Below are positions 550 to 59,814 of a stretch of 64,000 nucleotides of DNA, in pieces. The DNA lies in IMG/VR virus record IMGVR_UViG_3300032242_003291, positions 186,001 to 250,000 of that record; one strand, given 5' to 3'. Position numbers and translations under genes: made by a program. The notes under the pieces are model-generated. The model was not told the DNA's origin, made no database searches, and worked only from the letters and a program-made list of their open reading frames with translations. The stretch's first letter is position 1. Every line of letters starts with the position of its first letter.

Positions 550-588
550 TTTTTTTTGAAAGATAGTATTTATTAAAAAATCTAATAC

Positions 589-717
589 ATGGCAAAAGCA
601 AAATCGTCAGGAGAATCAAGAAAGGTAACTTTCGGTAAAAGAAAAACAGGAGCAGCTAAAAAGACTTACAACAAACATTCTCCAAGACCAAAAGCTTACA
701 AAGGTCAAGGAAGATAA
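589..717 (+). CDS. small basic Lys/Arg-rich protein (42 aa, ends YKGQGR)
   Basis: Not in ORF track; MAKAKSSGESRKVTFGKRKTGAAKKTYNKHSPRPKAYKGQGR; TATTTAT at 567-573. Confidence 0.7.
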   Translation: MAKAKSSGESRKVTFGKRKTGAAKKTYNKHSPRPKAYKGQGR

Positions 718-753
718 TCTTCAAAACACAAATTAATTTGCTATATTTTTATC

Positions 754-1041
754 ATGTTAGATAAGAAAAGGAGAATCTTTCGCCTGATTGAAAATTATAT
801 CAACGATTATCAGGGTAACGCTGTACAAACTTTGTATGGTAAAGGAGCTCATATCAAAATTCATAACATAAATTTTTCAGTAACTCAAAAATCAATTTTG
901 ATGAAGGCCGTTATTATCTTAGGTGAATTAATCAACGAAGAAGTAATGGATAGGACTCTTGCTGATATACTAATTAACGACGCAATGACCTATTTTTATC
1001 CCGAATGTTCCGTAAAAACTTATATTAGATTTGATGTATAA
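754..1041 (+). CDS. hypothetical protein
   Basis: 95-aa ORF with A-rich initiation context. Confidence 0.7.
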   Translation: MLDKKRRIFRLIENYINDYQGNAVQTLYGKGAHIKIHNINFSVTQKSILMKAVIILGELINEEVMDRTLADILINDAMTYFYPECSVKTYIRFDV

Positions 1042-1079: not shown

Positions 1080-1556
1080 ATGAAAAGAATATTATACATT
1101 TTAATACCGTTACTATTTTTATCTTTTACAAAACCATTTTATATCCGTTATAAAGTTTTGTTCACATTAGAAAATTTCACAATATCGGGTAAAAAAGTGG
1201 AAAATATTAAACCAATTTTATATGAAGTTTTAGATAACACTACAGATGATTTATCGTTTAGTTTACATAGTAAAATTTCAGACATCAAAAGTAGTAAGAA
1301 AGCAAATTGTATTGGTTATACCAAATATTATAATTCTAAATTAATCGAGAAGTTGAAAGAAAAAGGGATTGGAAATATCACAATTTCACATGCTAGAGTT
1401 AAAATATTATTGTTTGGTGTTAATATTCACGTATTTAATTCAAACTCTTGGAAAGACCACGACGTATCTGTTGTAAAAAATAACACGACAGGAGATGTCT
1501 ATTATGTAGACCCAAGTCTGTCTGAGGTATTTGGAGATATAATTGTTAAACAGTGA
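1080..1556 (+). CDS. exported protein, transglutaminase-like/cysteine-protease fold candidate
   Basis: N-terminal signal peptide; ANCIGY...HA...HD...YYVDPS resembles a Cys-His-Asp triad layout. Confidence 0.5.
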   Translation: MKRILYILIPLLFLSFTKPFYIRYKVLFTLENFTISGKKVENIKPILYEVLDNTTDDLSFSLHSKISDIKSSKKANCIGYTKYYNSKLIEKLKEKGIGNITISHARVKILLFGVNIHVFNSNSWKDHDVSVVKNNTTGDVYYVDPSLSEVFGDIIVKQ

Positions 1557-2589
1557 TATTGACAGGATAACCAGGGTATCCATCTCCTTCTTTGAAGGCA
1601 ACTGCATTTCTCACAACACTATATAAAGTTCCTTTACCAGTAAAATAACCCGATAATGCATCTGTGAAATTTTGCATAATTTTTTCTTTTGGTAATCCAA
1701 CACTGTTAAAATCATAGTTGTCTCTTACAGTTACAGATGTTTTGTCTGGGGACACTTTGATTGCTGGTGGGTCAACTTCCCCTAACGTATACATAAACTC
1801 ACCCGCTAAACCAGGGTCGAATAGACTTCCTTGACCCGATGATTTCAAATTTTGGCTTTCTTTTTCAGAACCAGTGGCTGTCATTGCTGTTGGTAAATTT
1901 CCAGCACCTATTGACTTCCAAAGAGGATAAGTTAATCCTTTTTTAGCATTTGCTATTGCAACGCTTTTAAGAAATTCTTGTTCTTTTCTTGTTAAATCGG
2001 CAGCTGTAAATGGCTCAGTTCTACCACCCAAATAATCCATTAAAGCTCTAATGTGTAATGGTAAACTAGATTTTTTTGCTGGCGGAACTTTTTTAAGTTG
2101 TTTCATAAATCCCAAATATTGTTCTTGAGTCATTCCACCATGTGTTTCTCTTTCAAATCTTCCACCTTTACCCAAATAATCACTGTGTAAATTAGCATCA
2201 TCTTTTGGAAATAACGATTTGTTTAGTCCTGCGAACTTTGGATTGAGAGAAACGTCTGTCTTTCCAATCGATTGTTTTTTTTGTGTTTTACCTGTTGTTG
2301 GTTTTGGTGTAAATGGTAAATTGTTCAATGGTGGTAGTCCACCTATGAATCTTTTTAGTGCGGCATCGGTAAGGTTACCAAAATATCCTGTTGGCACCAT
2401 AGAATCGGTTTTAAGGTATCCTGAATCTATTAATTTTTGTTGTAACGCTTTAACATCATCTCCTCTATCACCAAATTTCAAGTTTTTCGGGTTGAGGTTA
2501 ACATAGGGACTTTGGATATATTTTTGTTCCCTCAAAACCTTTTTAACTATTTTAGTTAAGTCCGATTCTTTTAATTTTATTATTTTCAC
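1546..2589 (-). CDS. leader-bearing protein with peptidoglycan-binding (PG_binding_1-like) domain
   Basis: MKIIKLKESDLTKIVKKVLREQ leader; LKFGDRGDDVKALQQKL...TGYFGNLTDAALKRF. Confidence 0.75.
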   Translation of the reverse strand: MKIIKLKESDLTKIVKKVLREQKYIQSPYVNLNPKNLKFGDRGDDVKALQQKLIDSGYLKTDSMVPTGYFGNLTDAALKRFIGGLPPLNNLPFTPKPTTGKTQKKQSIGKTDVSLNPKFAGLNKSLFPKDDANLHSDYLGKGGRFERETHGGMTQEQYLGFMKQLKKVPPAKKSSLPLHIRALMDYLGGRTEPFTAADLTRKEQEFLKSVAIANAKKGLTYPLWKSIGAGNLPTAMTATGSEKESQNLKSSGQGSLFDPGLAGEFMYTLGEVDPPAIKVSPDKTSVTVRDNYDFNSVGLPKEKIMQNFTDALSGYFTGKGTLYSVVRNAVAFKEGDGYPGYPVNITV

Positions 2590-2897
2590 TATAACGAAGA
2601 TTTATTAAGTGATTTATATAGGTCAGAATTTTCTTTTTGTAGATATTCAACTTTGACTGCTAATGCAGCAACTTGTTCAGTCAATTTCAATATAGTCTGT
2701 CTCATTTCATCTTTTTCTTTTGATGAATTTTCTAATAGTGCCTCCAACTTCGATATTCTGTCTTTACAATCGTGACGAATGAATTCTTCATCTCTTTCTT
2801 TTCTTAATGATTTTTTCTCATAAAATCTCCAAGCACTCGCAGAACCTAAAACTCCAACTATAGTAATTAAAACTGTCCAAACATTTTGTTGTTCCAT
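2589..2897 (-). CDS. membrane protein with coiled coil, holin-like
   Basis: One N-terminal TM helix plus charged coiled coil; TATTTAT at 2912-2918; upstream of a PG-binding gene. Confidence 0.5.
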   Translation of the reverse strand: MEQQNVWTVLITIVGVLGSASAWRFYEKKSLRKERDEEFIRHDCKDRISKLEALLENSSKEKDEMRQTILKLTEQVAALAVKVEYLQKENSDLYKSLNKSSL

Positions 2898-3047
2898 TAT
2901 TCTATTTTAGAATAAATATTACACATTCAAAGAAAAAGTGTCTTTTGGTCAGGATGGAAATAATTATTATTCTTTCAGAATAATAATAAGAATTAATAAA
3001 ATACTAAAAAAAAATTAAAAAACTAGTAATACTAGTTCTAGGGAATT

Positions 3048-3484: not shown

Positions 3485-3982
3485 TTATTTTCCTTTAATC
3501 ATTTCCATTGCATGTTTCAAAAACTCTTTTGCTCTTGGTGCAACATGTTCCATTCCATAAACCTTTTCGATGTCTTTAACTAATTCTTCACCGTGTTCGT
3601 TTTCTTTGTATAACTCGATGATTTTATCCATTGCGGTTCCACACTCTTTTTTAGTTTCGTCAAAATAGTTGTACGGTTTGAATCCTTTTAGGTGATTCAT
3701 AACGTCATACGCCAAATGTTCTCCACCATCTGAAACCTTTGGGTGTAATCTTAAAGTTTTTAACAATTCAAGTTTGTCAACTAGTCCGTGAACACCTTGT
3801 TTTCTTAATTTAACTCCATCGATATAGTCATCTGCATCACCATCACCCATAATTTCTTCTAATGTCTTAACATTTCCACCATGACAGAATTTTCTGTCAT
3901 CTTTTTGTTCTGACTGCTCAACCAAATACAGTTTTTGTATTTGTTGCTTTTCTGATTCTGTTATTTCAAATCTTTTTCCCAT
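3485..3982 (-). CDS. leader-bearing hypothetical protein
   Basis: MGKRFEITESEK...LVEQ; TATTTAT at 3987-3993; terminator at ~3428-3450. Confidence 0.8.
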   Translation of the reverse strand: MGKRFEITESEKQQIQKLYLVEQSEQKDDRKFCHGGNVKTLEEIMGDGDADDYIDGVKLRKQGVHGLVDKLELLKTLRLHPKVSDGGEHLAYDVMNHLKGFKPYNYFDETKKECGTAMDKIIELYKENEHGEELVKDIEKVYGMEHVAPRAKEFLKHAMEMIKGK

Positions 3983-4017: not shown

Positions 4018-4731
4018 TTACAAAATATCGTGTAAAAAAGAATTTTTCTTGGTTTCTGATAAATACTCTTTGGTAAATGAAAATGGGTCGTAAGGAATTA
4101 CGTTAAAAACTTTTTTATAATAACAATAAATCCTTTTTGCCGAGTCAAATTCATAAATTTGGTCAAATTTCAAAGGTCTTGTGGTGATAAATCGATTATT
4201 TTCAATTTTTTGACGAATTTTTTCACTATCGATTGAAGAATCCGATTTAATAAAACTTAAATTTTCTAAATCTTCCTTTAAATTTTCCATTCTAATAAAA
4301 TACTCAGGAATTCTACTATCAAAAGTCCATTTTGAAAAAAAATTGTAGTTAATATTATCAGTTTGATTAAATTTTGATAATTCCACTAAAGTTTTTCTTT
4401 TGATAAATGATTCCAATACCCATTCGTTAAACCTTTCTTTTATTTTTTGATAAATTGACTTTTCGATTACCACATCTCCGTATTGAGTTAACAAAAAAAC
4501 AGCAAAAATTCTATCATAAGGGTTCCTAACACTACAAATTAGTTTATAATTCGAGAATTCTTCAGGTATTTGATTAAAATGACTAGTATACCTCTCTTTC
4601 AAAGATATTTCATCATTTGTTTTCGAATTATAAACAAAAAAGTCATAATCGGATAAAATTTCTCTTGTAATTTTTGTACCACACCTTTCAGGTGCCCACC
4701 ATATAACATTATGTTTGTAAGATATGTTCAT
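4018..4731 (-). CDS. sulfotransferase (Sulfotransfer_2-like)
   Basis: PERCGT 5'-PSB-like loop, SVRNPYDR 3'-PB motif, FIRMENLKEDL. Confidence 0.75.
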   Translation of the reverse strand: MNISYKHNVIWWAPERCGTKITREILSDYDFFVYNSKTNDEISLKERYTSHFNQIPEEFSNYKLICSVRNPYDRIFAVFLLTQYGDVVIEKSIYQKIKERFNEWVLESFIKRKTLVELSKFNQTDNINYNFFSKWTFDSRIPEYFIRMENLKEDLENLSFIKSDSSIDSEKIRQKIENNRFITTRPLKFDQIYEFDSAKRIYCYYKKVFNVIPYDPFSFTKEYLSETKKNSFLHDIL

Positions 4732-4767: not shown

Positions 4768-5433
4768 ATGAAAAAATCATTCAAAAAATTTTGGTTACCT
4801 GTATTAGTAGGTTTCAGTCTTTTTATCTTGTCTTTCGTTGGTGCAAAAGCACAAGATGTTGTTGTTTTGAAACACACAAATTACACATCACATTTTAGTA
4901 AATCAAAACACTACCCAGTTATGGTTGAGTGGTGGATTACTAAAGCAAAAGCGGGTTGTGCAAATCAACTTGCAAGAAAAGACAACTTCAAACCTGACCC
5001 TTTATTGTTGAAAGAAACTGATTTAGCGGCAGACTACGTAGGTAGTGGTACTGATAGAGGTCATAATATGCCAGCGGCGGAAAACCAATGTCAGACTGCT
5101 ACAGTTCAAGACGAATGTTTTTACTTCTCAAACATGACACCACAATATCATTCACTAAATGCTGGTGATTGGAAAACATTAGAAGTTTTAGAAAGACAAA
5201 TTGCTAACGATAATGATTCAGTTCACGTTTGGTGTGGAAGTATTGGTGAAGCAAAGAAAATTGGAAAAGTCTCGGTTCCAACTGAATGTTGGAAAGTTAT
5301 TTACGTATTAAAAACTAAAGAATGGATGGCCTATGAGTTTAAGAACACAACTGATAAACCATCAGGGTTAAACTCTCATAAAGTAACTGTTGCAGATATT
5401 ACAAAATTAACAGGATTAAAATTCGTTAAATAA
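4768..5433 (+). CDS. exported DNA/RNA non-specific endonuclease (NucA/Serratia family)
   Basis: Signal peptide; DRGH motif, FYFSNMTPQ, LNAGDWKTLE, VPTECWKV. Confidence 0.9.
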   Translation: MKKSFKKFWLPVLVGFSLFILSFVGAKAQDVVVLKHTNYTSHFSKSKHYPVMVEWWITKAKAGCANQLARKDNFKPDPLLLKETDLAADYVGSGTDRGHNMPAAENQCQTATVQDECFYFSNMTPQYHSLNAGDWKTLEVLERQIANDNDSVHVWCGSIGEAKKIGKVSVPTECWKVIYVLKTKEWMAYEFKNTTDKPSGLNSHKVTVADITKLTGLKFVK

Positions 5434-12313: not shown

Positions 12314-13033
12314 TTATACCATATTTGAACCTTTGGATACTCCTAACGAAGCATATACAGGTTCTGCAATTGATTTTGCTTGATTAGCTATTTGTTTAAC
12401 TACATTTTCGTAACCGCTACCAGCATATCTTTGATTGTTTGAATTTGTAAAGTTATTCAATAAATCAGATGCTGTTTTACCAACCAAATAATTTTTGGCA
12501 ATTAAATCAAAATAAGTTTGAATACCGTCCTCAACTGAGGAATGATATACATTCTTTCCTGTATCCACGTTCCCAACATTAAATGGATTTTTGGTTCTAA
12601 TTGGTCTTGCATTTGGATTACTTGCAAATCCACCTTCAGTTGCAAGTTGAGCCAAAGCTAATTCAACAGGAACATATTTGTTAAATTTATTGTAAGTATT
12701 TTTTGCTGCACTTGCTAACATATCACCTGTAATCCCTAATAAGTTTGATGACCTTTTAGAAATGAAATTGTCTGCAATTGTTTTATATGCATCATATCCT
12801 TGGCTTGTATTCAAATCTAATGGTGTAAATGTCCCTGAGGTAGACAATCCAGCAGCACTTGATGTTGATGGCGTAGAGTTATCTTGTTTTTTATCAAGTC
12901 CTTTTAAGAATGATGACAAATAACTTGTAAAATCGTTAGGATTTTTATTTTGACCAAGTCCACCTAACATTTGACTGGCAAATAAGTTGGCTAATTCTTG
13001 TTCAGTTAATATTACTTTGAATTTTTTACCCAT
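12314..13033 (-). CDS. leader-bearing glucosaminidase/lysozyme-like cell-wall hydrolase
   Basis: MGKKFKVILTEQEL; ALAQLATEGGF...KNPFNVG...YFDLIAKNY...RYA; start re-assigned to 13033 (TATTTAT at 13038-13044). Confidence 0.75.
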   Translation of the reverse strand: MGKKFKVILTEQELANLFASQMLGGLGQNKNPNDFTSYLSSFLKGLDKKQDNSTPSTSSAAGLSTSGTFTPLDLNTSQGYDAYKTIADNFISKRSSNLLGITGDMLASAAKNTYNKFNKYVPVELALAQLATEGGFASNPNARPIRTKNPFNVGNVDTGKNVYHSSVEDGIQTYFDLIAKNYLVGKTASDLLNNFTNSNNQRYAGSGYENVVKQIANQAKSIAEPVYASLGVSKGSNMV

Positions 13034-30749: not shown

Positions 30750-31184
30750 CTAAAATCCTTTAATAATCTTTTTAACCAATCTGTTGATATCAGATTCATC
30801 AATCTTCTTGAACTTACTAACTCTATGGTTTTTATAATAATTTAATAAGTCTTCCAACTTAAGTCCCATATAAGCAATTCTTAATTGACCTTCAACTTCA
30901 AATGGATTTATTACACGACCAATTTCATCAGATACTCTTAATGGTTCATCTTCTCCAAGTGGATTCTTAACACCACTCGGTAATAATATCAAATATTTCT
31001 TTGGAGGTACGGAAACATAAAAGAATTGTCCCAACTTTGAATAGTGGTCCCAAAACCCTGGACCAAATACCTGTGGATTTCTAAACTCCTTTGGTAATTC
31101 CTTATAAGAATTAATCATTTTAATTTGGTTCCAAAAATGTTTTCCAAATTCTTTCTTTAATAGTTTAATCATCATTTCATTCAT
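30750..31184 (-). CDS. hypothetical protein with leader-like motif at the C-terminus
   Basis: Ends KKIDESDINRLVKKIIKGF; TATTTAT at 31189-31195. Confidence 0.75.
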   Translation of the reverse strand: MNEMMIKLLKKEFGKHFWNQIKMINSYKELPKEFRNPQVFGPGFWDHYSKLGQFFYVSVPPKKYLILLPSGVKNPLGEDEPLRVSDEIGRVINPFEVEGQLRIAYMGLKLEDLLNYYKNHRVSKFKKIDESDINRLVKKIIKGF

Positions 31185-31222
31185 ATCAATAAATACAAAA
31201 TTTTTCCAGAAATTTTTTAATT

Positions 31223-47472: not shown

Positions 47473-47958
47473 TTAAAGATTTTTTGGTTTACCAGCTCCT
47501 CTGTATGCTTTCTTATAATTTGGTTCATTCAGACTACTAATTTTAACACCTTCATATTTATTTGAAGCATGGACAAACATTGTTTCACCTATGTAAGTTC
47601 CGCAATGCCATTTGGATGGAGATGCCTTACTTTTGAAAAAAACAATATCACCGACCTGTAAACTATCCTTCTTTACTCTTTCCGTTGTCTCCCATTGTAA
47701 AATACAGGTATTTTCAATGTTTATCTTATAAACATCCGAAGCCAGTCTTTTGTTAAATTGAGAGCAATCAATACCTTTCTCGGTACTTCCTCCCAATTTG
47801 TATGGTTTTCTTAACCAATAGGTAATAAAATTATTCAAATTAGAATCTACTGCGAATCTGGGTTTAGTTTCAAATATTTGTGTTGGAACAAACACCTGAG
47901 CGTTTAGTTTTGTTGTAAATAAAAGTACAATAACTGTACTAAAAATAAGTTTTTTCAT
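47473..47958 (-). CDS. exported NlpC/P60 peptidoglycan peptidase
   Basis: Signal peptide; PYKLGG...GIDCS, GDIVFF, HCGTYIG...FVHAS. Confidence 0.92.
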   Translation of the reverse strand: MKKLIFSTVIVLLFTTKLNAQVFVPTQIFETKPRFAVDSNLNNFITYWLRKPYKLGGSTEKGIDCSQFNKRLASDVYKINIENTCILQWETTERVKKDSLQVGDIVFFKSKASPSKWHCGTYIGETMFVHASNKYEGVKISSLNEPNYKKAYRGAGKPKNL

Positions 47959-54604: not shown

Positions 54605-55642
54605 TTAATACCATGTTTGTCTTTTCTCATCAAACGTCCAACCATCTCTTTGTTCTCCAGGTTCTCCTGTACCTGTTGGTGGTTGTGGTGATTTTTGTGT
54701 TGTTTGCTCAGGTGCTTGTTGTGCTGATTGTTGCGCTTGTTGTGGCGCTGGTTGTGTTGTATCATTATCCCCTTCAACACCTTGTTTTGTTGTATTTCCA
54801 CTATCTTCAACAGCTGTGTAGTCACTGTATGGATTATTATTCTGAGTTTGGCCACCTTTCAAATATTCATCTTTATATGACGCCCATGCCTTTGTTGTTC
54901 TTGGACCCATTCTACCATAACCCGCACCTGTTTTGTTCAAAATATTATTAGCATACCCTGTAGCCCAACCTGCCTTGTTTTCATCTAACCAATCTTGGAA
55001 AGCCTTTACTCCTTTAATATCTTTTAATTCAGGTGGCGTCGGAGTTACACTTGAAGTAGAGCCACCCCCGCCACTTTTTTTATTAGTATCACTTTTCCAT
55101 TTTTTTGTCGCAGAAGTAAAACTATCACCATCAGCAGTGTTTATTATTAGATTAGTTCCATCTACTTTCCAAGTTCCAGTCCATGTGTCAGATACTGCTT
55201 TTCTAGCTAAAAGATTATCCCATCCATCAGAAATATAAAATTTTCCATCAGGCATAAATCCATAATAATACTTTTCATTCTCACCAGTTCTTTGTGCAGC
55301 AAGTAATCCAGTGTCTTTATTTCTCACAGTTGGATAATGAATAACCTTAAAATAAGATGTATCTTTTAGGAAAGCCATCAAAATAGGAAATTTGTCAAAC
55401 CATCCTGTAGTTGAGGCAACATTATATTTAGCGTCAAGTTCTGCTTGCTTTTTGTTAGCTGCGGCAATGTCGTCAGCAGTTCTGTGTTCAGTACCAGGGT
55501 CTATTTTGTTTAGTTCCGCTCTTTCATAACTACCAATCACATCTTCATTAAATTCTTGTTCAGAAATTACTCTACCTCTTTGATATCCAAATAAGGATTT
55601 CATTCTTGTGATATCTTCATTAATCAATTTTTTTGAATCCAT
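54605..55642 (-). CDS. leader-bearing protein with PG-binding-like segment and Gln/Pro/Thr tail
   Basis: MDSKKLINEDITRMKSL...VISEQ; VKAFQDWLD...GPRTTKAW; TATTTATAAATA at 55651-55662. Confidence 0.7.
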   Translation of the reverse strand: MDSKKLINEDITRMKSLFGYQRGRVISEQEFNEDVIGSYERAELNKIDPGTEHRTADDIAAANKKQAELDAKYNVASTTGWFDKFPILMAFLKDTSYFKVIHYPTVRNKDTGLLAAQRTGENEKYYYGFMPDGKFYISDGWDNLLARKAVSDTWTGTWKVDGTNLIINTADGDSFTSATKKWKSDTNKKSGGGGSTSSVTPTPPELKDIKGVKAFQDWLDENKAGWATGYANNILNKTGAGYGRMGPRTTKAWASYKDEYLKGGQTQNNNPYSDYTAVEDSGNTTKQGVEGDNDTTQPAPQQAQQSAQQAPEQTTQKSPQPPTGTGEPGEQRDGWTFDEKRQTWY

Positions 55643-55674
55643 GTCTATTTTATTTATAAATATTCAATAAAACA

Positions 55675-58045: not shown

Positions 58046-59449
58046 TTTAGATTCTTTTTCTTCTTCAATCTTTTCTTTTAGTTTTGTTTTGAATTCGTTG
58101 GCTATCATCTTTGTAAATTTAACATAAGGGTGGTCTTCGCTCTCAGGATTATAACGATAAGAACCTTGAGGTGGTCTTGTACCTCTACCCAAATAACTTA
58201 ATCCTCCAATGTTTGTGATACATTTATGCCCACCTGAATTAGATTGAATTAAATCCCATGCATTTACCAAGATACTGTCTAAAATGTTTTTTTCTCTATC
58301 AGTCAAATCTTTGAATGGTTTCTCCATCATCTCCCTAATCTTATCTAAAGCTTCCTCCCCTTTTGGAATACCTATGAATTTACCACCATATATCGCATCA
58401 AAATCTTGGAACGTATACCCAATACTTTCAGGACCAACACTAGTCTCGCTAATCCATTTAATTGTAGATAATGGTATTTTCTTGTCTTTGAGTTGACCTT
58501 CCCATTTTGATAATACTTCTTGTGCTATCTCACCTAAATTTACGCCTTTAAGTCCTCGGTCTTTTTTGAAGGGATTACAAGATGCTTGAACTAATCCCAT
58601 GGGCCAAGCCATAATCAAAAAATCGGATTCAGGATTATTTCTGAATGGTGTGTATCTATCATAAGAACCTGGTTTGAACATACTACCACCACCATATTGA
58701 TAAATTATATTATCACTAACCTGAGGAAAATCCTTCATTTGTTGTGCATAATCATCTGCATTTGATTGTAATTCTTCAGGACCTACTGAATTGGTCTTTT
58801 TCATCCACTCTTTGATGTTTCCTAATATTGAAAGTAATGATGGTTCCGAATCCATAACCAATCCTTCCAAAAAACCTGGCTTATTTTTGAATGCTAAAAT
58901 TAATTTGTTAATGACCAAACCTAACAACATTTTATTTTTTTGTAATGATTTGTCTTTATCGAATCTGTATATATAATTTACGACTTCATCAGGAGTAATA
59001 TTGTGTTTAATAAAATCCGCAGAGTCTACAGTATTAATTAACAAAACATCTGATGTTGGAAACAAATCTTTTGTTGATACTACTTGAGATATCGTTTCGA
59101 CATTTGAACGTGCACCTCTAAATTGTTTTGATGTTCCCTTTTCAACCCCTACTTGTGTGTCATGATGGTCAGTATGAATTTTGAACATTGGTTTACCGTG
59201 AGCAAAATCTACAAGGACAGGCATTGTATCACCTGTTGCATCATTTTTTTTAACTGAAAACTCCTTGTCACCATATTGAATTACATGAGCCCCAACAACA
59301 TCAATACCATTATCTTCAAGATATTTTTTCATTGCAATTGCTGTTGTAACACCATCTAAGTCCTGATGAAAATAAATTTCGGCTTTGGGATATCTTTTCC
59401 TCAAAGCCGAAATATCTCTTATACCGCTTTCGTTAATTAATTTTTTCAT
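58037..59449 (-). CDS. DHH-family phosphoesterase-like protein with short leader
   Basis: MKKLINE-SG; YFHQDLDG, VDFAH, HTDHH, INTVDSAD, SGGH. Confidence 0.75.
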   Translation of the reverse strand: MKKLINESGIRDISALRKRYPKAEIYFHQDLDGVTTAIAMKKYLEDNGIDVVGAHVIQYGDKEFSVKKNDATGDTMPVLVDFAHGKPMFKIHTDHHDTQVGVEKGTSKQFRGARSNVETISQVVSTKDLFPTSDVLLINTVDSADFIKHNITPDEVVNYIYRFDKDKSLQKNKMLLGLVINKLILAFKNKPGFLEGLVMDSEPSLLSILGNIKEWMKKTNSVGPEELQSNADDYAQQMKDFPQVSDNIIYQYGGGSMFKPGSYDRYTPFRNNPESDFLIMAWPMGLVQASCNPFKKDRGLKGVNLGEIAQEVLSKWEGQLKDKKIPLSTIKWISETSVGPESIGYTFQDFDAIYGGKFIGIPKGEEALDKIREMMEKPFKDLTDREKNILDSILVNAWDLIQSNSGGHKCITNIGGLSYLGRGTRPPQGSYRYNPESEDHPYVKFTKMIANEFKTKLKEKIEEEKESKLK

Positions 59450-59814
59450 TAAAGTCCAATCCAATTTAGGAATCTATCCATTAAACCTCCTTCATCTGCA
59501 ACAAGGTCTTGTAATTGTTTTCTGTCTTGTGGTGGCATTTTACTCCAAGTTTCTTCACCCCACACTCCATCAGGTCTTCTACAACCAATACTTGATTGAT
59601 ATCTCGATATTGCTTGTGATGTTTGTGATGTTTGATTGATGTCCGTTTTACCGTCAACAGTCAGTGGTTGTCTATTATCACCTGTAATTTTTTTATTATT
59701 CAAGAATCTTTGAATTGCTCTAATGAATTGTCTATCCATGTTTTGTTCTGAAATAACTCTTTTAACAAGATTAGTTAAATCGTTTTCTGTAAGTCTTATT
59801 ATTTTTTTTGCCAT
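59449..59814 (-). CDS. leader-bearing peptidoglycan-binding domain protein
   Basis: MAKKIIRLTENDLTNLVKRVISEQ; IRAIQRFLN...LTVDG...AISRYQ...PDGVWGEETW. Confidence 0.8.
   Translation of the reverse strand: MAKKIIRLTENDLTNLVKRVISEQNMDRQFIRAIQRFLNNKKITGDNRQPLTVDGKTDINQTSQTSQAISRYQSSIGCRRPDGVWGEETWSKMPPQDRKQLQDLVADEGGLMDRFLNWIGL

What the first reader, a model, noticed from the sequence alone, without database searches (positions are those of the whole stretch)
1546..2897. Holin-like gene coupled to a leader-tagged PG-binding protein with an unknown C-terminal domain
Seen: a single-TM coiled-coil gene overlaps by 1 nt with a gene encoding leader + PG_binding_1 + about 200 aa of unrecognised sequence. 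Two more leader-tagged PG-binding proteins (54605, 59449) and a leader-tagged glucosaminidase (12314) also occur. Inference: the cell-wall binders may be packaged ejection proteins for crossing the periplasm, distinct from the signal-peptide lysins at 47473 and 49022.
Basis: partly seen in the sequence, partly recalled or inferred. Interest (0 to 1): 0.6.

Follow-up and report, generated by a model that had tools for sequence, protein, structure and literature searches.

The report
Phage head-packaged colicin-M-like wall enzyme
A 317-kb T4-like phage encodes a cell-wall-binding protein whose "unknown" end is a distant relative of the colicin M lipid II-cutting toxin domain, whose short leader looks like a cleavable capsid-packaging tag, and whose constant neighbour is an exported protease-fold protein rather than the holin-like gene.

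Summary
The two genes exist as described: a 102-aa one-TM coiled-coil gene (2589..2897, -) overlaps by 1 nt a 347-aa gene (1546..2589, -) with a leader, PG_binding_1 and about 180 aa that match no family.

Three points change the picture.

1. The unknown domain is a distant homologue of the colicin M catalytic domain.
- Profile-profile probability is 72% (score 35.4), against at most 0.4% (score at most 14.8) in 32 controls.
- The alignment is collinear over 120 columns.
- The invariant D-x-Y-D-F-N matches the ColM active-site motif, but the ColM His-Arg pair is missing.

2. The leader is one of several N-terminal tags that all end in [LI]-x-E.
- This is the cleavage motif of the T4 gp21 prohead protease, which this phage encodes.
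- Its capsid protein keeps the T4 cleavage site.
- None of 201 family members has a signal peptide.
- Packaging into heads is therefore likely, but not shown.

3. The conserved partner is the convergent 158-aa exported transglutaminase-fold Cys/His/Asp protein (1080..1556, +), present in 10 of 14 lineages.
- The holin-like gene accompanies the enzyme in only 3 of 14.

A leaderless PG_binding_1+GH19 endolysin candidate lies elsewhere in the genome. No activity has been tested.

The parts
2912..2918 (-). Promoter-like heptamer TATTTAT, 21 nt before the ATG of the 102-aa gene. The same motif precedes the scaffold, gp21 protease, portal and GH19 endolysin genes and most leader-tagged genes.
   Evidence: The heptamer lies within 60 nt upstream of 79 of 344 crude genes, against 6.4 expected. 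Positions are listed gene by gene. Coordinates were checked. Reading it as a late promoter is inference.
2589..2897 (-). 102-aa bitopic membrane protein: one TM span (aa 7-24, nt 2826-2879) followed by a basic, acidic and coiled-coil tail. This is the 'holin-like' gene; its role is unresolved.
   Evidence: ORF and sequence. PHROG 2658 'hol-like chemotaxis' 6e-8, with weak holin and Rz-like spanin families. Only generic coiled-coil Pfam hits below cut-off. Homologue found upstream of the enzyme gene only in L014 and L008/L009.
1546..2589 (-). 347-aa modular protein: leader, PG_binding_1, Pro/Thr/Lys-rich linker, then a colicin-M-like C-terminal domain. GTG start, 1-nt overlap with the upstream gene.
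2527..2589 (-). Leader, aa 1-21, ending V-L-R-E. Predicted propeptide and capsid-targeting tag, with predicted cleavage after Glu21.
   Evidence: Leader HMM gives 8 N-terminal copies in the genome. Four leader types all end in [LI]-x-E. E21 is at least 90% conserved among homologues. The gp21-type protease is present. The capsid protein site aligns with the T4 site. Cleavage itself is inferred.
2347..2466 (-). PG_binding_1 domain (aa 42-81; first 37 of 57 profile positions).
   Evidence: Pfam E 1.8e-7, 31.7 bits against a cut-off of 23. Genome scan for the family.
1549..2082 (-). C-terminal domain (aa 170-347), a distant homologue of the colicin M catalytic (lipid II phosphoesterase) domain.
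1705..1722 (-). Motif D-N-Y-D-F-N (aa 290-295), the most conserved feature of the family. It aligns with ColM D226-K-Y-D-F-N231.
   Evidence: D, Y, D and N are invariant or at least 90% conserved across 73 sequences down to 21% identity. ColM sequence taken from a pColBM plasmid. Aligned by hhalign. ColM D226, Y228 and D229 are essential (PMC8469651).
1080..1556 (+). Convergent 158-aa partner: N-terminal signal or anchor plus a transglutaminase-like fold, with invariant Cys77 (nt 1308), His127 (nt 1458) and Asp144 (nt 1509). Its 3' end overlaps the enzyme gene by 11 nt.
567..1041 (+). Head of the partner's probable operon: TATTTAT at 567-573, a 42-aa very basic ORF (589..717) and a 95-aa ORF (754..1041). 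All are conserved in synteny in L008 and L014.
59449..59814 (-). 121-aa protein with the same leader (ending V-I-S-E) plus PG_binding_1 only.
3485..3982 (-). 165-aa protein with a second leader type (I-T-E-S-E-K ... L-V-E-Q); cargo unknown.
   Evidence: The same leader type heads ColM-like proteins in other phages.
54605..55642 (-). 345-aa protein with a third leader type (ending V-I-S-E-Q). TATTTAT lies 20 nt upstream. No Pfam domain detected.
12314..13027 (-). 237-aa protein with a variant leader (ending L-T-E-Q) and a sub-threshold glucosaminidase match.

Best explanation
The 347-aa protein is a modular cell-envelope effector of a T4-like jumbo phage, and it is probably carried inside the head.

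Shown by computation:
1. It has an N-terminal 21-aa leader, a PG_binding_1 module, a linker and a C-terminal domain.
2. That C-terminal domain is a distant homologue of the colicin M catalytic domain. It retains the D-x-Y-D-F-N core but lacks the ColM His-Arg pair.
3. The leader belongs to a set of interchangeable N-terminal tags that all end in [LI]-x-E.
4. The phage has a gp21-type prohead protease, and its capsid protein keeps the T4 cleavage site.
5. The gene forms a conserved convergent pair with an exported transglutaminase-fold Cys/His/Asp protein.
6. The pair of the 102-aa gene and the enzyme gene sits behind the same promoter-like motif as the head genes.

Inferred mechanism:
1. The leader docks the protein to the scaffolding core of the prohead.
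2. The prohead protease removes the leader after Glu21.
3. The mature protein leaves the head at infection and binds peptidoglycan through PG_binding_1.
4. It then attacks lipid II, or a related undecaprenyl-pyrophosphate-linked wall precursor, on the periplasmic face. This would locally weaken or block wall repair at the entry site.
5. The exported partner acts in the periplasm of the infected cell as an antagonist, an immunity function against lysis from without by further virions.

The partner's immunity role fits two observations. It occupies the position and strand of cmi relative to cma. In three lineages it is replaced in situ by a small two-TM membrane protein.

The 102-aa membrane protein is a lineage-specific co-transcribed neighbour whose holin role is not established.
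For: ColM homology:
- hhalign of the diverse family alignment A8 against the ColM catalytic alignment A9 gives probability 72.3%, E 3.3e-5.
- With a low MAC threshold or in global mode the alignment is one collinear run of 120 columns. It joins four conserved blocks: A-L..Y-L.G, L-G, D.Y-D-F-N, and G-x-P-x-x-I.
- Reversed, unrelated and 30 column-shuffled controls reach at most 0.4% probability and a score of at most 14.8.
- An ESM feature neighbour cluster carries PF14859.
- The ColM motif D226-K-Y-D-F-N-A-S-T-H-R236 is conserved and essential in ColM (PMC8469651).

Leader as a prohead tag:
- Searches show 12 tagged genes with 4 leader types.
- The genome has a gp21-type protease and a gp23 capsid protein.
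- The T4 gp23 site L-T-E|A aligns with I-N-E|A in this phage's capsid protein.
- Family-wide, 172 of 201 members carry a site and 0 of 201 carry a signal peptide. Among control ORFs the figures are 59 of 195 and 8 of 195.
- In L012 the gene lies in the head module among other tagged genes.
- T4 precedent: the capsid-targeting sequence and gp21 cleavage after Glu (PMC3012670; PMC5694885).

Partner:
- Conserved in 10 of 14 lineages; replaced by a 112-aa two-TM protein in 3.
- Transglutaminase-like fold and invariant triad.
- cma and cmi are also convergent. Cmi is periplasmic and membrane-anchored, and ColM immunity proteins are either anchored or integral membrane proteins.

Interchangeable cargo:
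- The same leader plus PG_binding_1 module carries a TseH-type domain in P0118 and in the gene next to the partner in L010.

Distinct canonical endolysin candidate.

Shared promoter-like motif.
Against: - There is no experimental evidence of packaging, cleavage, ejection or enzyme activity.
- HMMER finds no link to Pfam Colicin_M or to any PDB sequence.
- The ColM His235-Arg236 pair, essential in ColM, is absent at the aligned position. The His-x-Arg at aa 179-181 is lost in remote members. The chemistry may therefore differ, or the domain may be inactive.
- T4 internal proteins are thought to enter the cytoplasm with the DNA, where neither a PG-binding module nor a ColM-type enzyme would have a target. 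Release into the periplasm from a contractile-tailed phage is an assumption.
- The partner keeps an intact catalytic triad, which suits an enzyme better than a passive immunity protein.
- The complex prediction gave no answer.
- The partner's operon carries the same promoter-like motif, so there is no sign of early, protective expression.
- Late timing fits a lysis role as well as a virion role.
Confidence: 0.5

Rival explanations
1. Ordinary lysis cassette. The 102-aa protein is a holin. The 347-aa protein is a cytoplasmic endolysin with a wall-binding module and a new catalytic domain, released through holin holes. The convergent exported transglutaminase-fold protein is a second, secreted lysin. 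The leader is a regulatory or membrane-associating helix and not a packaging tag.
For: - Tight coupling of the small TM gene and the wall-binding gene, with a 1-nt overlap here and in L014.
- PHROG holin-like and spanin-like hits for the 102-aa protein.
- PHROG 'endolysin' families match the PG-binding part.
- The C-domain is fused to PG_binding_1, PG_binding_3, LysM or SH3 in many phages, as lysin domains are.
- Transglutaminase-fold enzymes serve as phage lysins in methanogen viruses (PeiW and PeiP matches).
- The promoter-like motif is shared with the GH19 endolysin candidate.
Against: - The holin-like gene is present in only 3 of 14 lineages.
- A standard leaderless PG_binding_1+GH19 endolysin candidate, next to small membrane proteins, lies elsewhere in the genome.
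- The same leaders head many unrelated proteins and all end in a gp21-type site.
- The family never uses a signal peptide or SAR domain (0 of 201).
- In L012 the gene sits in the head module.
- A ColM-type lipid II enzyme would be a slow tool for end-of-cycle lysis.
Confidence: 0.2
2. The ColM-like domain is a non-catalytic relic. The protein is a packaged structural or wall-anchoring protein, for example one that tethers the ejection machinery to peptidoglycan, and it makes no enzymatic attack on lipid II.
For: - The His-Arg pair essential in ColM is missing.
- ColM-like domains with degenerate motifs are thought to be inactive in PmnH and PmdH.
- A 121-aa leader plus PG_binding_1 protein with no other domain exists, so wall binding alone may be useful.
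Against: - D, Y, D and N of the motif, plus several Gly and Tyr residues, stay invariant down to 21% identity in 73 sequences. That is typical of an active site.
- The conserved adjacent exported partner suggests an activity that needs control.
- The alternative cargo domain (TseH-type) belongs to an enzyme family.
Confidence: 0.15
3. Bacteriocin-like weapon. The enzyme and partner are a toxin-immunity pair. The unpackaged product is released at lysis to kill neighbouring competitors or uninfected hosts, and the partner protects the producer cell. The leader has another role.
For: - ColM homology, with an immunity-like gene in the cmi position and orientation.
- In-situ replacement of the partner by a two-TM protein, as with the diverse ColM immunity types.
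- Cargo exchange with a TseH-type effector domain, as in polymorphic toxins.
Against: - There is no receptor-binding or translocation domain and no TonB box to cross an outer membrane. The N-terminal module binds peptidoglycan.
- Cytoplasmic ColM is harmless, so a producer would need no immunity.
- The family is confined to phage contigs, and every member printed begins with an N-terminal region; 172 of 201 carry a protease-site motif in aa 7-40.
Confidence: 0.07

Closest known systems
Colicin M and ColM-type bacteriocins (Pfam PF14859; ColM, PaeM, syringacin M, pectocins M1 and M2)
   Same: - Distant homology of the catalytic domain: hhalign 72%, collinear over 120 columns.
- They are the best fold matches.
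- Shared D-x-Y-D-F-N core.
- A cell-wall target is implied by the fused PG-binding modules.
- An exported protein is encoded immediately downstream on the opposite strand, as cmi is.
   Different: - No Pfam or HMMER match.
- His235-Arg236 are absent.
- An extra helix follows the motif.
- There is no receptor or translocation domain; a phage leader and PG_binding_1 take their place.
- The gene is encoded by phages.
- The partner has a transglutaminase-like fold and is not Cmi-like. No activity is known.
T4 internal head proteins (IPI-III, Alt) with a capsid-targeting sequence, cleaved by the gp21 prohead protease
   Same: - A short N-terminal tag is shared by otherwise unrelated cargo proteins.
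- The tag ends in [LI]-x-E, the gp21 cleavage motif.
- A gp21-type protease and a gp23 capsid protein with a conserved site are present.
- Literature precedent.
   Different: - The leaders are about 20-30 aa long and of several sequence types unrelated to the T4 tag.
- The cargo is directed at the cell wall, whereas T4 cargo targets cytoplasmic restriction or RNA polymerase.
- Packaging and cleavage are not demonstrated here.
Ejected or virion-borne wall enzymes and their antagonists (T7 gp16 transglycosylase domain; T4 gp5 lysozyme with the periplasmic inhibitor Spackle). Comparison from my own knowledge.
   Same: The concept is shared: a wall-active enzyme is delivered by the virion at entry, and an exported phage protein protects the already infected cell.
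   Different: - The enzyme families differ.
- T4 gp5 is a tail-tip protein, not head cargo.
- There is no sequence or fold relation.
- The antagonist role of the 158-aa protein is only inferred.
Modular endolysins of phages of Gram-negative bacteria (PG_binding_1 plus a catalytic domain, e.g. GH19 types)
   Same: N-terminal PG_binding_1 followed by a C-terminal wall-directed domain, with a small membrane protein gene upstream.
   Different: - It carries a cleavable-looking leader shared with other proteins.
- The catalytic domain is ColM-like, not a known muralytic family.
- The genome has its own leaderless PG_binding_1+GH19 protein.
Bacterial transglutaminase-like cysteine proteases (LapG, TglA, TgpA periplasmic domain) and the pseudomurein endoisopeptidases PeiW and PeiP. 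These compare with the 158-aa partner.
   Different: No Pfam match. The protein is much smaller, a minimal core of about 135 aa. Its substrate is unknown.

Membership tests
Colicin M catalytic domain family (PF14859) | Significant match to the family profile | tested here: not met
   No PF14859 hit in the genome at E<=10. No hit for any of 71+74 family members. A profile search against PDB sequences was empty.
Colicin M catalytic domain family (PF14859) | Remote homology by profile-profile comparison over the whole catalytic domain | tested here: met
   hhalign of A8 against A9 gives probability 72.3%, E 3.3e-5, with 120 collinear columns. 32 controls reach at most 0.4%. With the less diverse A3 alignment only the motif aligned, at probability 3-6%.
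Colicin M catalytic domain family (PF14859) | ColM-type fold | tested here: inconclusive
Colicin M catalytic domain family (PF14859) | Active-site signature D-x-Y-D-(x5)-H-R | tested here: not met
   D290, Y292 and D293 (plus F and N) are present and invariant. H-R is absent at +5/+6, where the sequence reads S-V-G-L-P. Degenerate signatures are known in ColM relatives.
Colicin M catalytic domain family (PF14859) | Cleavage of lipid II into undecaprenol and 1-PP-MurNAc(peptide)-GlcNAc; toxic only from the periplasmic side | not testable with these tools
   Needs a biochemical assay and periplasmic expression.
Colicin M catalytic domain family (PF14859) | Linked immunity gene encoding a periplasm-facing or membrane protein | tested here: inconclusive
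   A convergent exported gene is conserved in 10 of 14 lineages and a two-TM protein replaces it in 3. The layout matches cma/cmi. The partner has an enzyme-like triad and a fold unlike Cmi's, and complex prediction gave no answer.
T4-type capsid-targeted, gp21-processed head proteins | N-terminal tag shared by unrelated cargo proteins | tested here: met
   8 copies of one leader plus 3 further types in this genome. The same tags are seen on neighbouring genes in related phages.
T4-type capsid-targeted, gp21-processed head proteins | Tag ends in the protease motif [LI]-x-E, and the phage has the matching protease | tested here: met
   All 12 leaders end in [LI]-x-E. Peptidase_S77 match at 78 bits. 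The capsid protein site aligns with T4 E65|A66. Family rate is 86% against 30% in controls.
T4-type capsid-targeted, gp21-processed head proteins | Protein present in virions with the propeptide removed, and ejected at infection | not testable with these tools
   No isolate carries the gene. No RNA or proteome data were found.
Holin (for the 102-aa protein) | Small membrane protein with at least one TM span and a charged C-terminus, encoded next to the endolysin | tested here: inconclusive
   One TM span and a charged tail. PHROG holin-like, holin and spanin families at 6e-8 to 8e-3. It is adjacent to the leader-tagged protein, not to the GH19 endolysin candidate, and is conserved in only 3 of 14 lineages. 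The T4 holin family PF11031 is absent from the genome.
Holin (for the 102-aa protein) | Timed, lethal hole formation that releases the endolysin | not testable with these tools
   Needs expression experiments.
PG_binding_1 (PF01471) | Score above the Pfam gathering cut-off | tested here: met
   31.7 bits against 23 and 34.4 bits in the genome scan. Only profile positions 1-37 of 57 are matched.
Transglutaminase-like cysteine peptidase fold (for the 158-aa partner) | Papain/transglutaminase core with Cys-His-Asp in order | tested here: met

The most novel reading that the evidence does not exclude
T4-like aquatic phages carry a polymorphic set of cell-wall toxins in their heads. The toxins include colicin-M-like and TseH-like domains, and perhaps glucosaminidase-like ones. 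Each toxin is addressed by a cleavable capsid-targeting leader and anchored by a PG-binding module. The phage fires them into the periplasm at infection. Each toxin is paired with a periplasmic or membrane antagonist gene that protects the infected cell from lysis from without. This would be a phage counterpart of type VI effector-immunity pairs, and the first lipid II-degrading enzyme used by a virus.
Probability: 0.3. Interest if true: 0.85.

Novelty: new variant of a known kind. Interest (0 to 1): 0.7.

Why it matters
- Colicin-M-type lipid II phosphoesterases are known as bacteriocins and polymorphic toxins. I found no report of one in a phage in the paper library.
- If the domain is active and virion-borne, it would be a new way for a virus to deal with the wall at entry: attacking the precursor rather than the polymer. 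It would also be a new class of ejected protein for contractile-tailed phages.
- The set of leaders ending in [LI]-x-E gives a simple sequence rule for predicting head cargo in uncultured T4-like phages.
- The conserved pair of enzyme and exported transglutaminase-fold protein is a testable candidate effector-antagonist system.
- A minimal ColM-like domain that works without the His-Arg pair would bear on the still unknown ColM mechanism.

Tried and rejected
1. Sequence searches for the C-domain gave nothing. These were Pfam, PHROGs and NCBIfam, PDB sequences searched with two profiles, and the Colicin_M model against the genome.
2. Foldseek against the PDB gave nothing significant.
3. hhalign with the low-diversity alignment A3 aligned only the 10-29 columns around the motif, at probability 3-6%. 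The link became clear only with the diverse alignment A8.
4. I considered whether His179/Arg181 (P-L-H-x-R) replace the missing ColM His-Arg pair. This is weakened because remote members lose them, with His changed to Tyr. I could not measure distances in the model.
5. Complex prediction of the C-domain with the 158-aa partner returned no answer (score 0.01). It is not evidence either way.
6. tblastn of the protein and of two remote relatives against 50,697 isolate phage records found no match. No cultured model phage was therefore identified.
7. The T4 late-promoter word TATAAATA occurs 24 times against 12 expected. Many of these hits are the reverse complement of the real upstream motif TATTTATA.
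8. I considered whether the partner gene is expressed from a different promoter class than the enzyme. This was dropped because the first ORF of its operon has the same motif.
9. T4 holin T (PF11031) is absent. Gp5_OB is also absent, but that search rang nowhere, so it is uninformative.
10. PHROGs on ten other leader-tagged proteins gave one family of unknown function only.
11. The function of BtpeA-CTD, one of the fold matches, could not be found in the held papers.
12. No RNA run holds the locus. Only small shares of its words occur in runs labelled freshwater metagenome.
Full report
**Setting.** The window is bases 186001-250000 of a single 317,259-bp IMG/VR virus record with 33% G+C. The phage has a T4-type head module:
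- a gp23 capsid protein (Pfam Gp23, 207 bits);
- a gp21-type prohead protease (Peptidase_S77, 78 bits);
- an acidic scaffold protein and a portal next to them.

Its capsid protein is most similar (about 42-44% identity over about 55% of the protein) to those of uncultured jumbo phages, a Microcystis phage and Flavobacterium phages.

- ORF 2589..2897 (-) encodes 102 aa with one TM span (aa 7-24) and a charged coiled-coil tail.
- ORF 1546..2589 (-) encodes 347 aa from a GTG that shares one base with the upstream stop codon. Homologues start at the same place with ATG.
- PG_binding_1 is above the Pfam cut-off at aa 42-81.
- The last 180 residues or so match no family.

- 59449 is the leader plus PG_binding_1.
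- 54605 has another leader type and no detectable PG-binding domain.
- 12314 has only a sub-threshold glucosaminidase match.
- 47473 is a signal-peptide NlpC/P60 protein and 49022 is a lipoprotein-signal glucosaminidase.

**The C-terminal domain.**

*A phage-borne family.*
- The word search found 179 relatives, all unnamed and from metagenomes, on contigs of up to 332 kb.
- The exhaustive profile search found 111 cluster representatives.
- The domain occurs alone, behind PG_binding_1 (20 of 74 remote members), or behind PG_binding_3, LysM or SH3.
- Over 73 sequences down to 21% identity, the invariant or nearly invariant positions are a Gly in L-G, the D-x-Y-D-x-N motif (aa 290-295) and G-Y-x-G near the C-terminus.

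*Fold evidence.*
- An AlphaFold model (pLDDT 76) has no Foldseek match in the PDB.

*Motif evidence.*
- I took natural ColM from plasmid pAPEC-O1-ColBM.
- Its active-site stretch D226-K-Y-D-F-N-A-S-T-H-R236, conserved and essential according to PMC8469651, shares D-x-Y-D-F-N with the phage family.

*Profile evidence.*
- With the diverse alignment A8 against 27 ColM catalytic domains (A9), hhalign gives probability 72%, E 3e-5.
- With a permissive alignment threshold, or in global mode, a single collinear alignment of 120 columns joins four conserved blocks of both families, including the motif.
- A reversed ColM profile, an unrelated alignment and 30 column-shuffled ColM profiles reach at most 0.4% probability and a score of at most 14.8, against 35.4 for the real pair.
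- A protein-language-model neighbour cluster also carries PF14859.

*Assessment.*
- I conclude that the domain is a distant homologue of the ColM catalytic domain.
- It is not a member by the family's own criteria. There is no Pfam match, and the His-Arg pair of the D-x-Y-D-(x5)-H-R signature is missing.
- Whether it cuts lipid II is therefore inference.

**The leader.**
- An HMM built from five copies finds eight N-terminal copies in the genome.
- Simple patterns find three further leader types, giving twelve tagged genes.
- All twelve end in [LI]-x-E followed by Q, S, A or H.
- The same is true of the very different leaders that head the ColM-like proteins of other phages.
- In 201 family members, 172 have such a site in residues 7-40, against 59 of 195 long ORFs of this genome. 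None of the 201 has an N-terminal hydrophobic signal, against 8 of 195.
[quoted passage not shown] These reach the scaffolding core through a capsid-targeting sequence (PMC5694885; PMC3012670).
- The T4 gp23 site (L-T-E|A, known mature N-terminus) aligns exactly with I-N-E|A in this phage's capsid protein. The protease specificity is thus probably conserved.
- In one related lineage the ColM-like gene sits three genes after gp23, between other tagged genes.
- I therefore read the leader as a propeptide and packaging tag, with cleavage after Glu21. This is a strong inference and not a demonstration.

**The neighbours.** I compared 14 distinct lineages, taken from 17 IMG/VR loci and 6 loci fetched through homologues.
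- The holin-like gene is found upstream in only three lineages: this phage, L014 and L008.
- The gene that stays with the enzyme is the convergent 158-aa gene (window 1080..1556, +), present in 10 of 14 lineages. Its 3' end usually overlaps the enzyme gene by 11 nt.
- In three lineages the same position is held by a 112-aa protein with two TM spans.
- The layout mirrors cma/cmi, which are also convergent. Cmi is a membrane-anchored periplasmic protein, and ColM immunity proteins are of several unrelated kinds, either anchored or integral membrane.
- This favours an antagonist (immunity) role. The intact triad, however, equally allows an enzyme acting on the wall or on the effector.
- The complex prediction gave no answer.

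**Other context.**
- The heptamer TATTTAT lies 11-36 nt before the start codon of 79 of 344 genes, against 6.4 expected.
- It precedes the scaffold, protease, portal and GH19 genes, most tagged genes, the 102-aa gene and the first ORF of the partner's operon.
- It is probably a late-type promoter, so all these genes would be co-regulated. This fits either a virion or a lysis role.
- A leaderless PG_binding_1+Glyco_hydro_19 protein at genome 171786-172655, flanked by a small TM protein and a lipoprotein-like protein, is the ordinary endolysin candidate.
- The same leader plus PG_binding_1 module is fused to a TseH-type domain in other phages. The cargo domain is therefore exchangeable, as in polymorphic toxins.

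**Verdict.**
- The finding is real.
- Its 'unknown' domain is a divergent ColM-type domain.
- Its leader is best explained as a T4-style packaging propeptide.
- Its true conserved partner is the convergent exported transglutaminase-fold gene, not the holin-like gene.
- The main rival is an ordinary holin-endolysin cassette. It is weakened by four things: the poor conservation of the holin-like gene, the separate GH19 endolysin candidate, the family-wide lack of signal peptides, and the shared protease-site leaders.
- No paper in the held library describes a phage ColM-like protein.
- All functional statements need the experiments listed under next steps.

Noticed in passing
whole genome; e.g. 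window 2912-2918 (-), 567-573 (+), 55651-55662: The heptamer TATTTAT (often [AGC]TATTTAT[ACT]) lies 11-36 nt before the start codon of 79 of 344 genes, against 6.4 expected. It often follows directly after a GC hairpin with a T-run. It precedes head genes, the GH19 endolysin and most leader-tagged genes, and is probably the phage's late promoter.
   Followed up: partly
genome 171786-172655 (+), outside the window (L032:1480-2349): A leaderless PG_binding_1 (1.4e-14) + Glyco_hydro_19 (7e-10) protein is the canonical endolysin candidate. It is flanked by a 108-aa TM protein and a 179-aa lipoprotein-like protein, which may be the real holin/spanin set.
   Followed up: partly
L010:5556-6650 (+) and protein P0118: In related phages the same leader plus PG_binding_1 module carries a TseH-type (PF25218) domain instead of the ColM-like one. 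In L010 this gene lies directly beside the transglutaminase-fold gene and a Peptidase_C92 gene.
   Followed up: partly
L012:5124-5462 (-), L017:4542-4880 (-), L019:4548-4886 (-): In three lineages the convergent partner position is held by a 112-aa protein with two TM spans and a Cys-rich loop. It also overlaps the enzyme gene by 11 nt.
   Followed up: partly
window 4768-5433 (+): A DNA/RNA non-specific endonuclease (Endonuclease_NS, 6e-36) with an N-terminal signal peptide. It is conserved in synteny in L008.
   Followed up: no
window 589-717 (+): A 42-aa extremely basic ORF (Lys/Arg/Gly-rich) heads the operon that ends in the transglutaminase-fold gene. It is conserved in L008, L009 and L014.
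   Followed up: no
genome 216753-217220 (-) (window about 30753-31220) and genome 100309-100989 (-): Two proteins carry a leader-like motif (..D-E-S-D-I-N-R-L-V-K-K-I-I.. and ..L-T-D-I-I-R-R-V-I-R-E..) at the C-terminus instead of the N-terminus. The second also has an N-terminal R-I-N-E-A tag and lies beside the capsid gene.
   Followed up: no
genome 104128-105750 (-), scaffold protein: The acidic scaffold protein contains a stretch (..L-V-K-E-S-L-S-E-Q..) that resembles the end of the leaders. The tags may imitate a scaffold segment.
   Followed up: no
window 4018-4731 (-): A 237-aa protein with a weak match to a PHROG sulfotransferase family (1.4e-4).
   Followed up: no
BFVD matches to the C-domain model: Structural relatives of the ColM-like domain are predicted in small podoviruses: Lentibacter phage vB_LenP_ICBM3 (E 4e-4) and, weakly, Roseobacter phage SIO1 gp23. 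The fold is thus not limited to T4-like phages.
   Followed up: no
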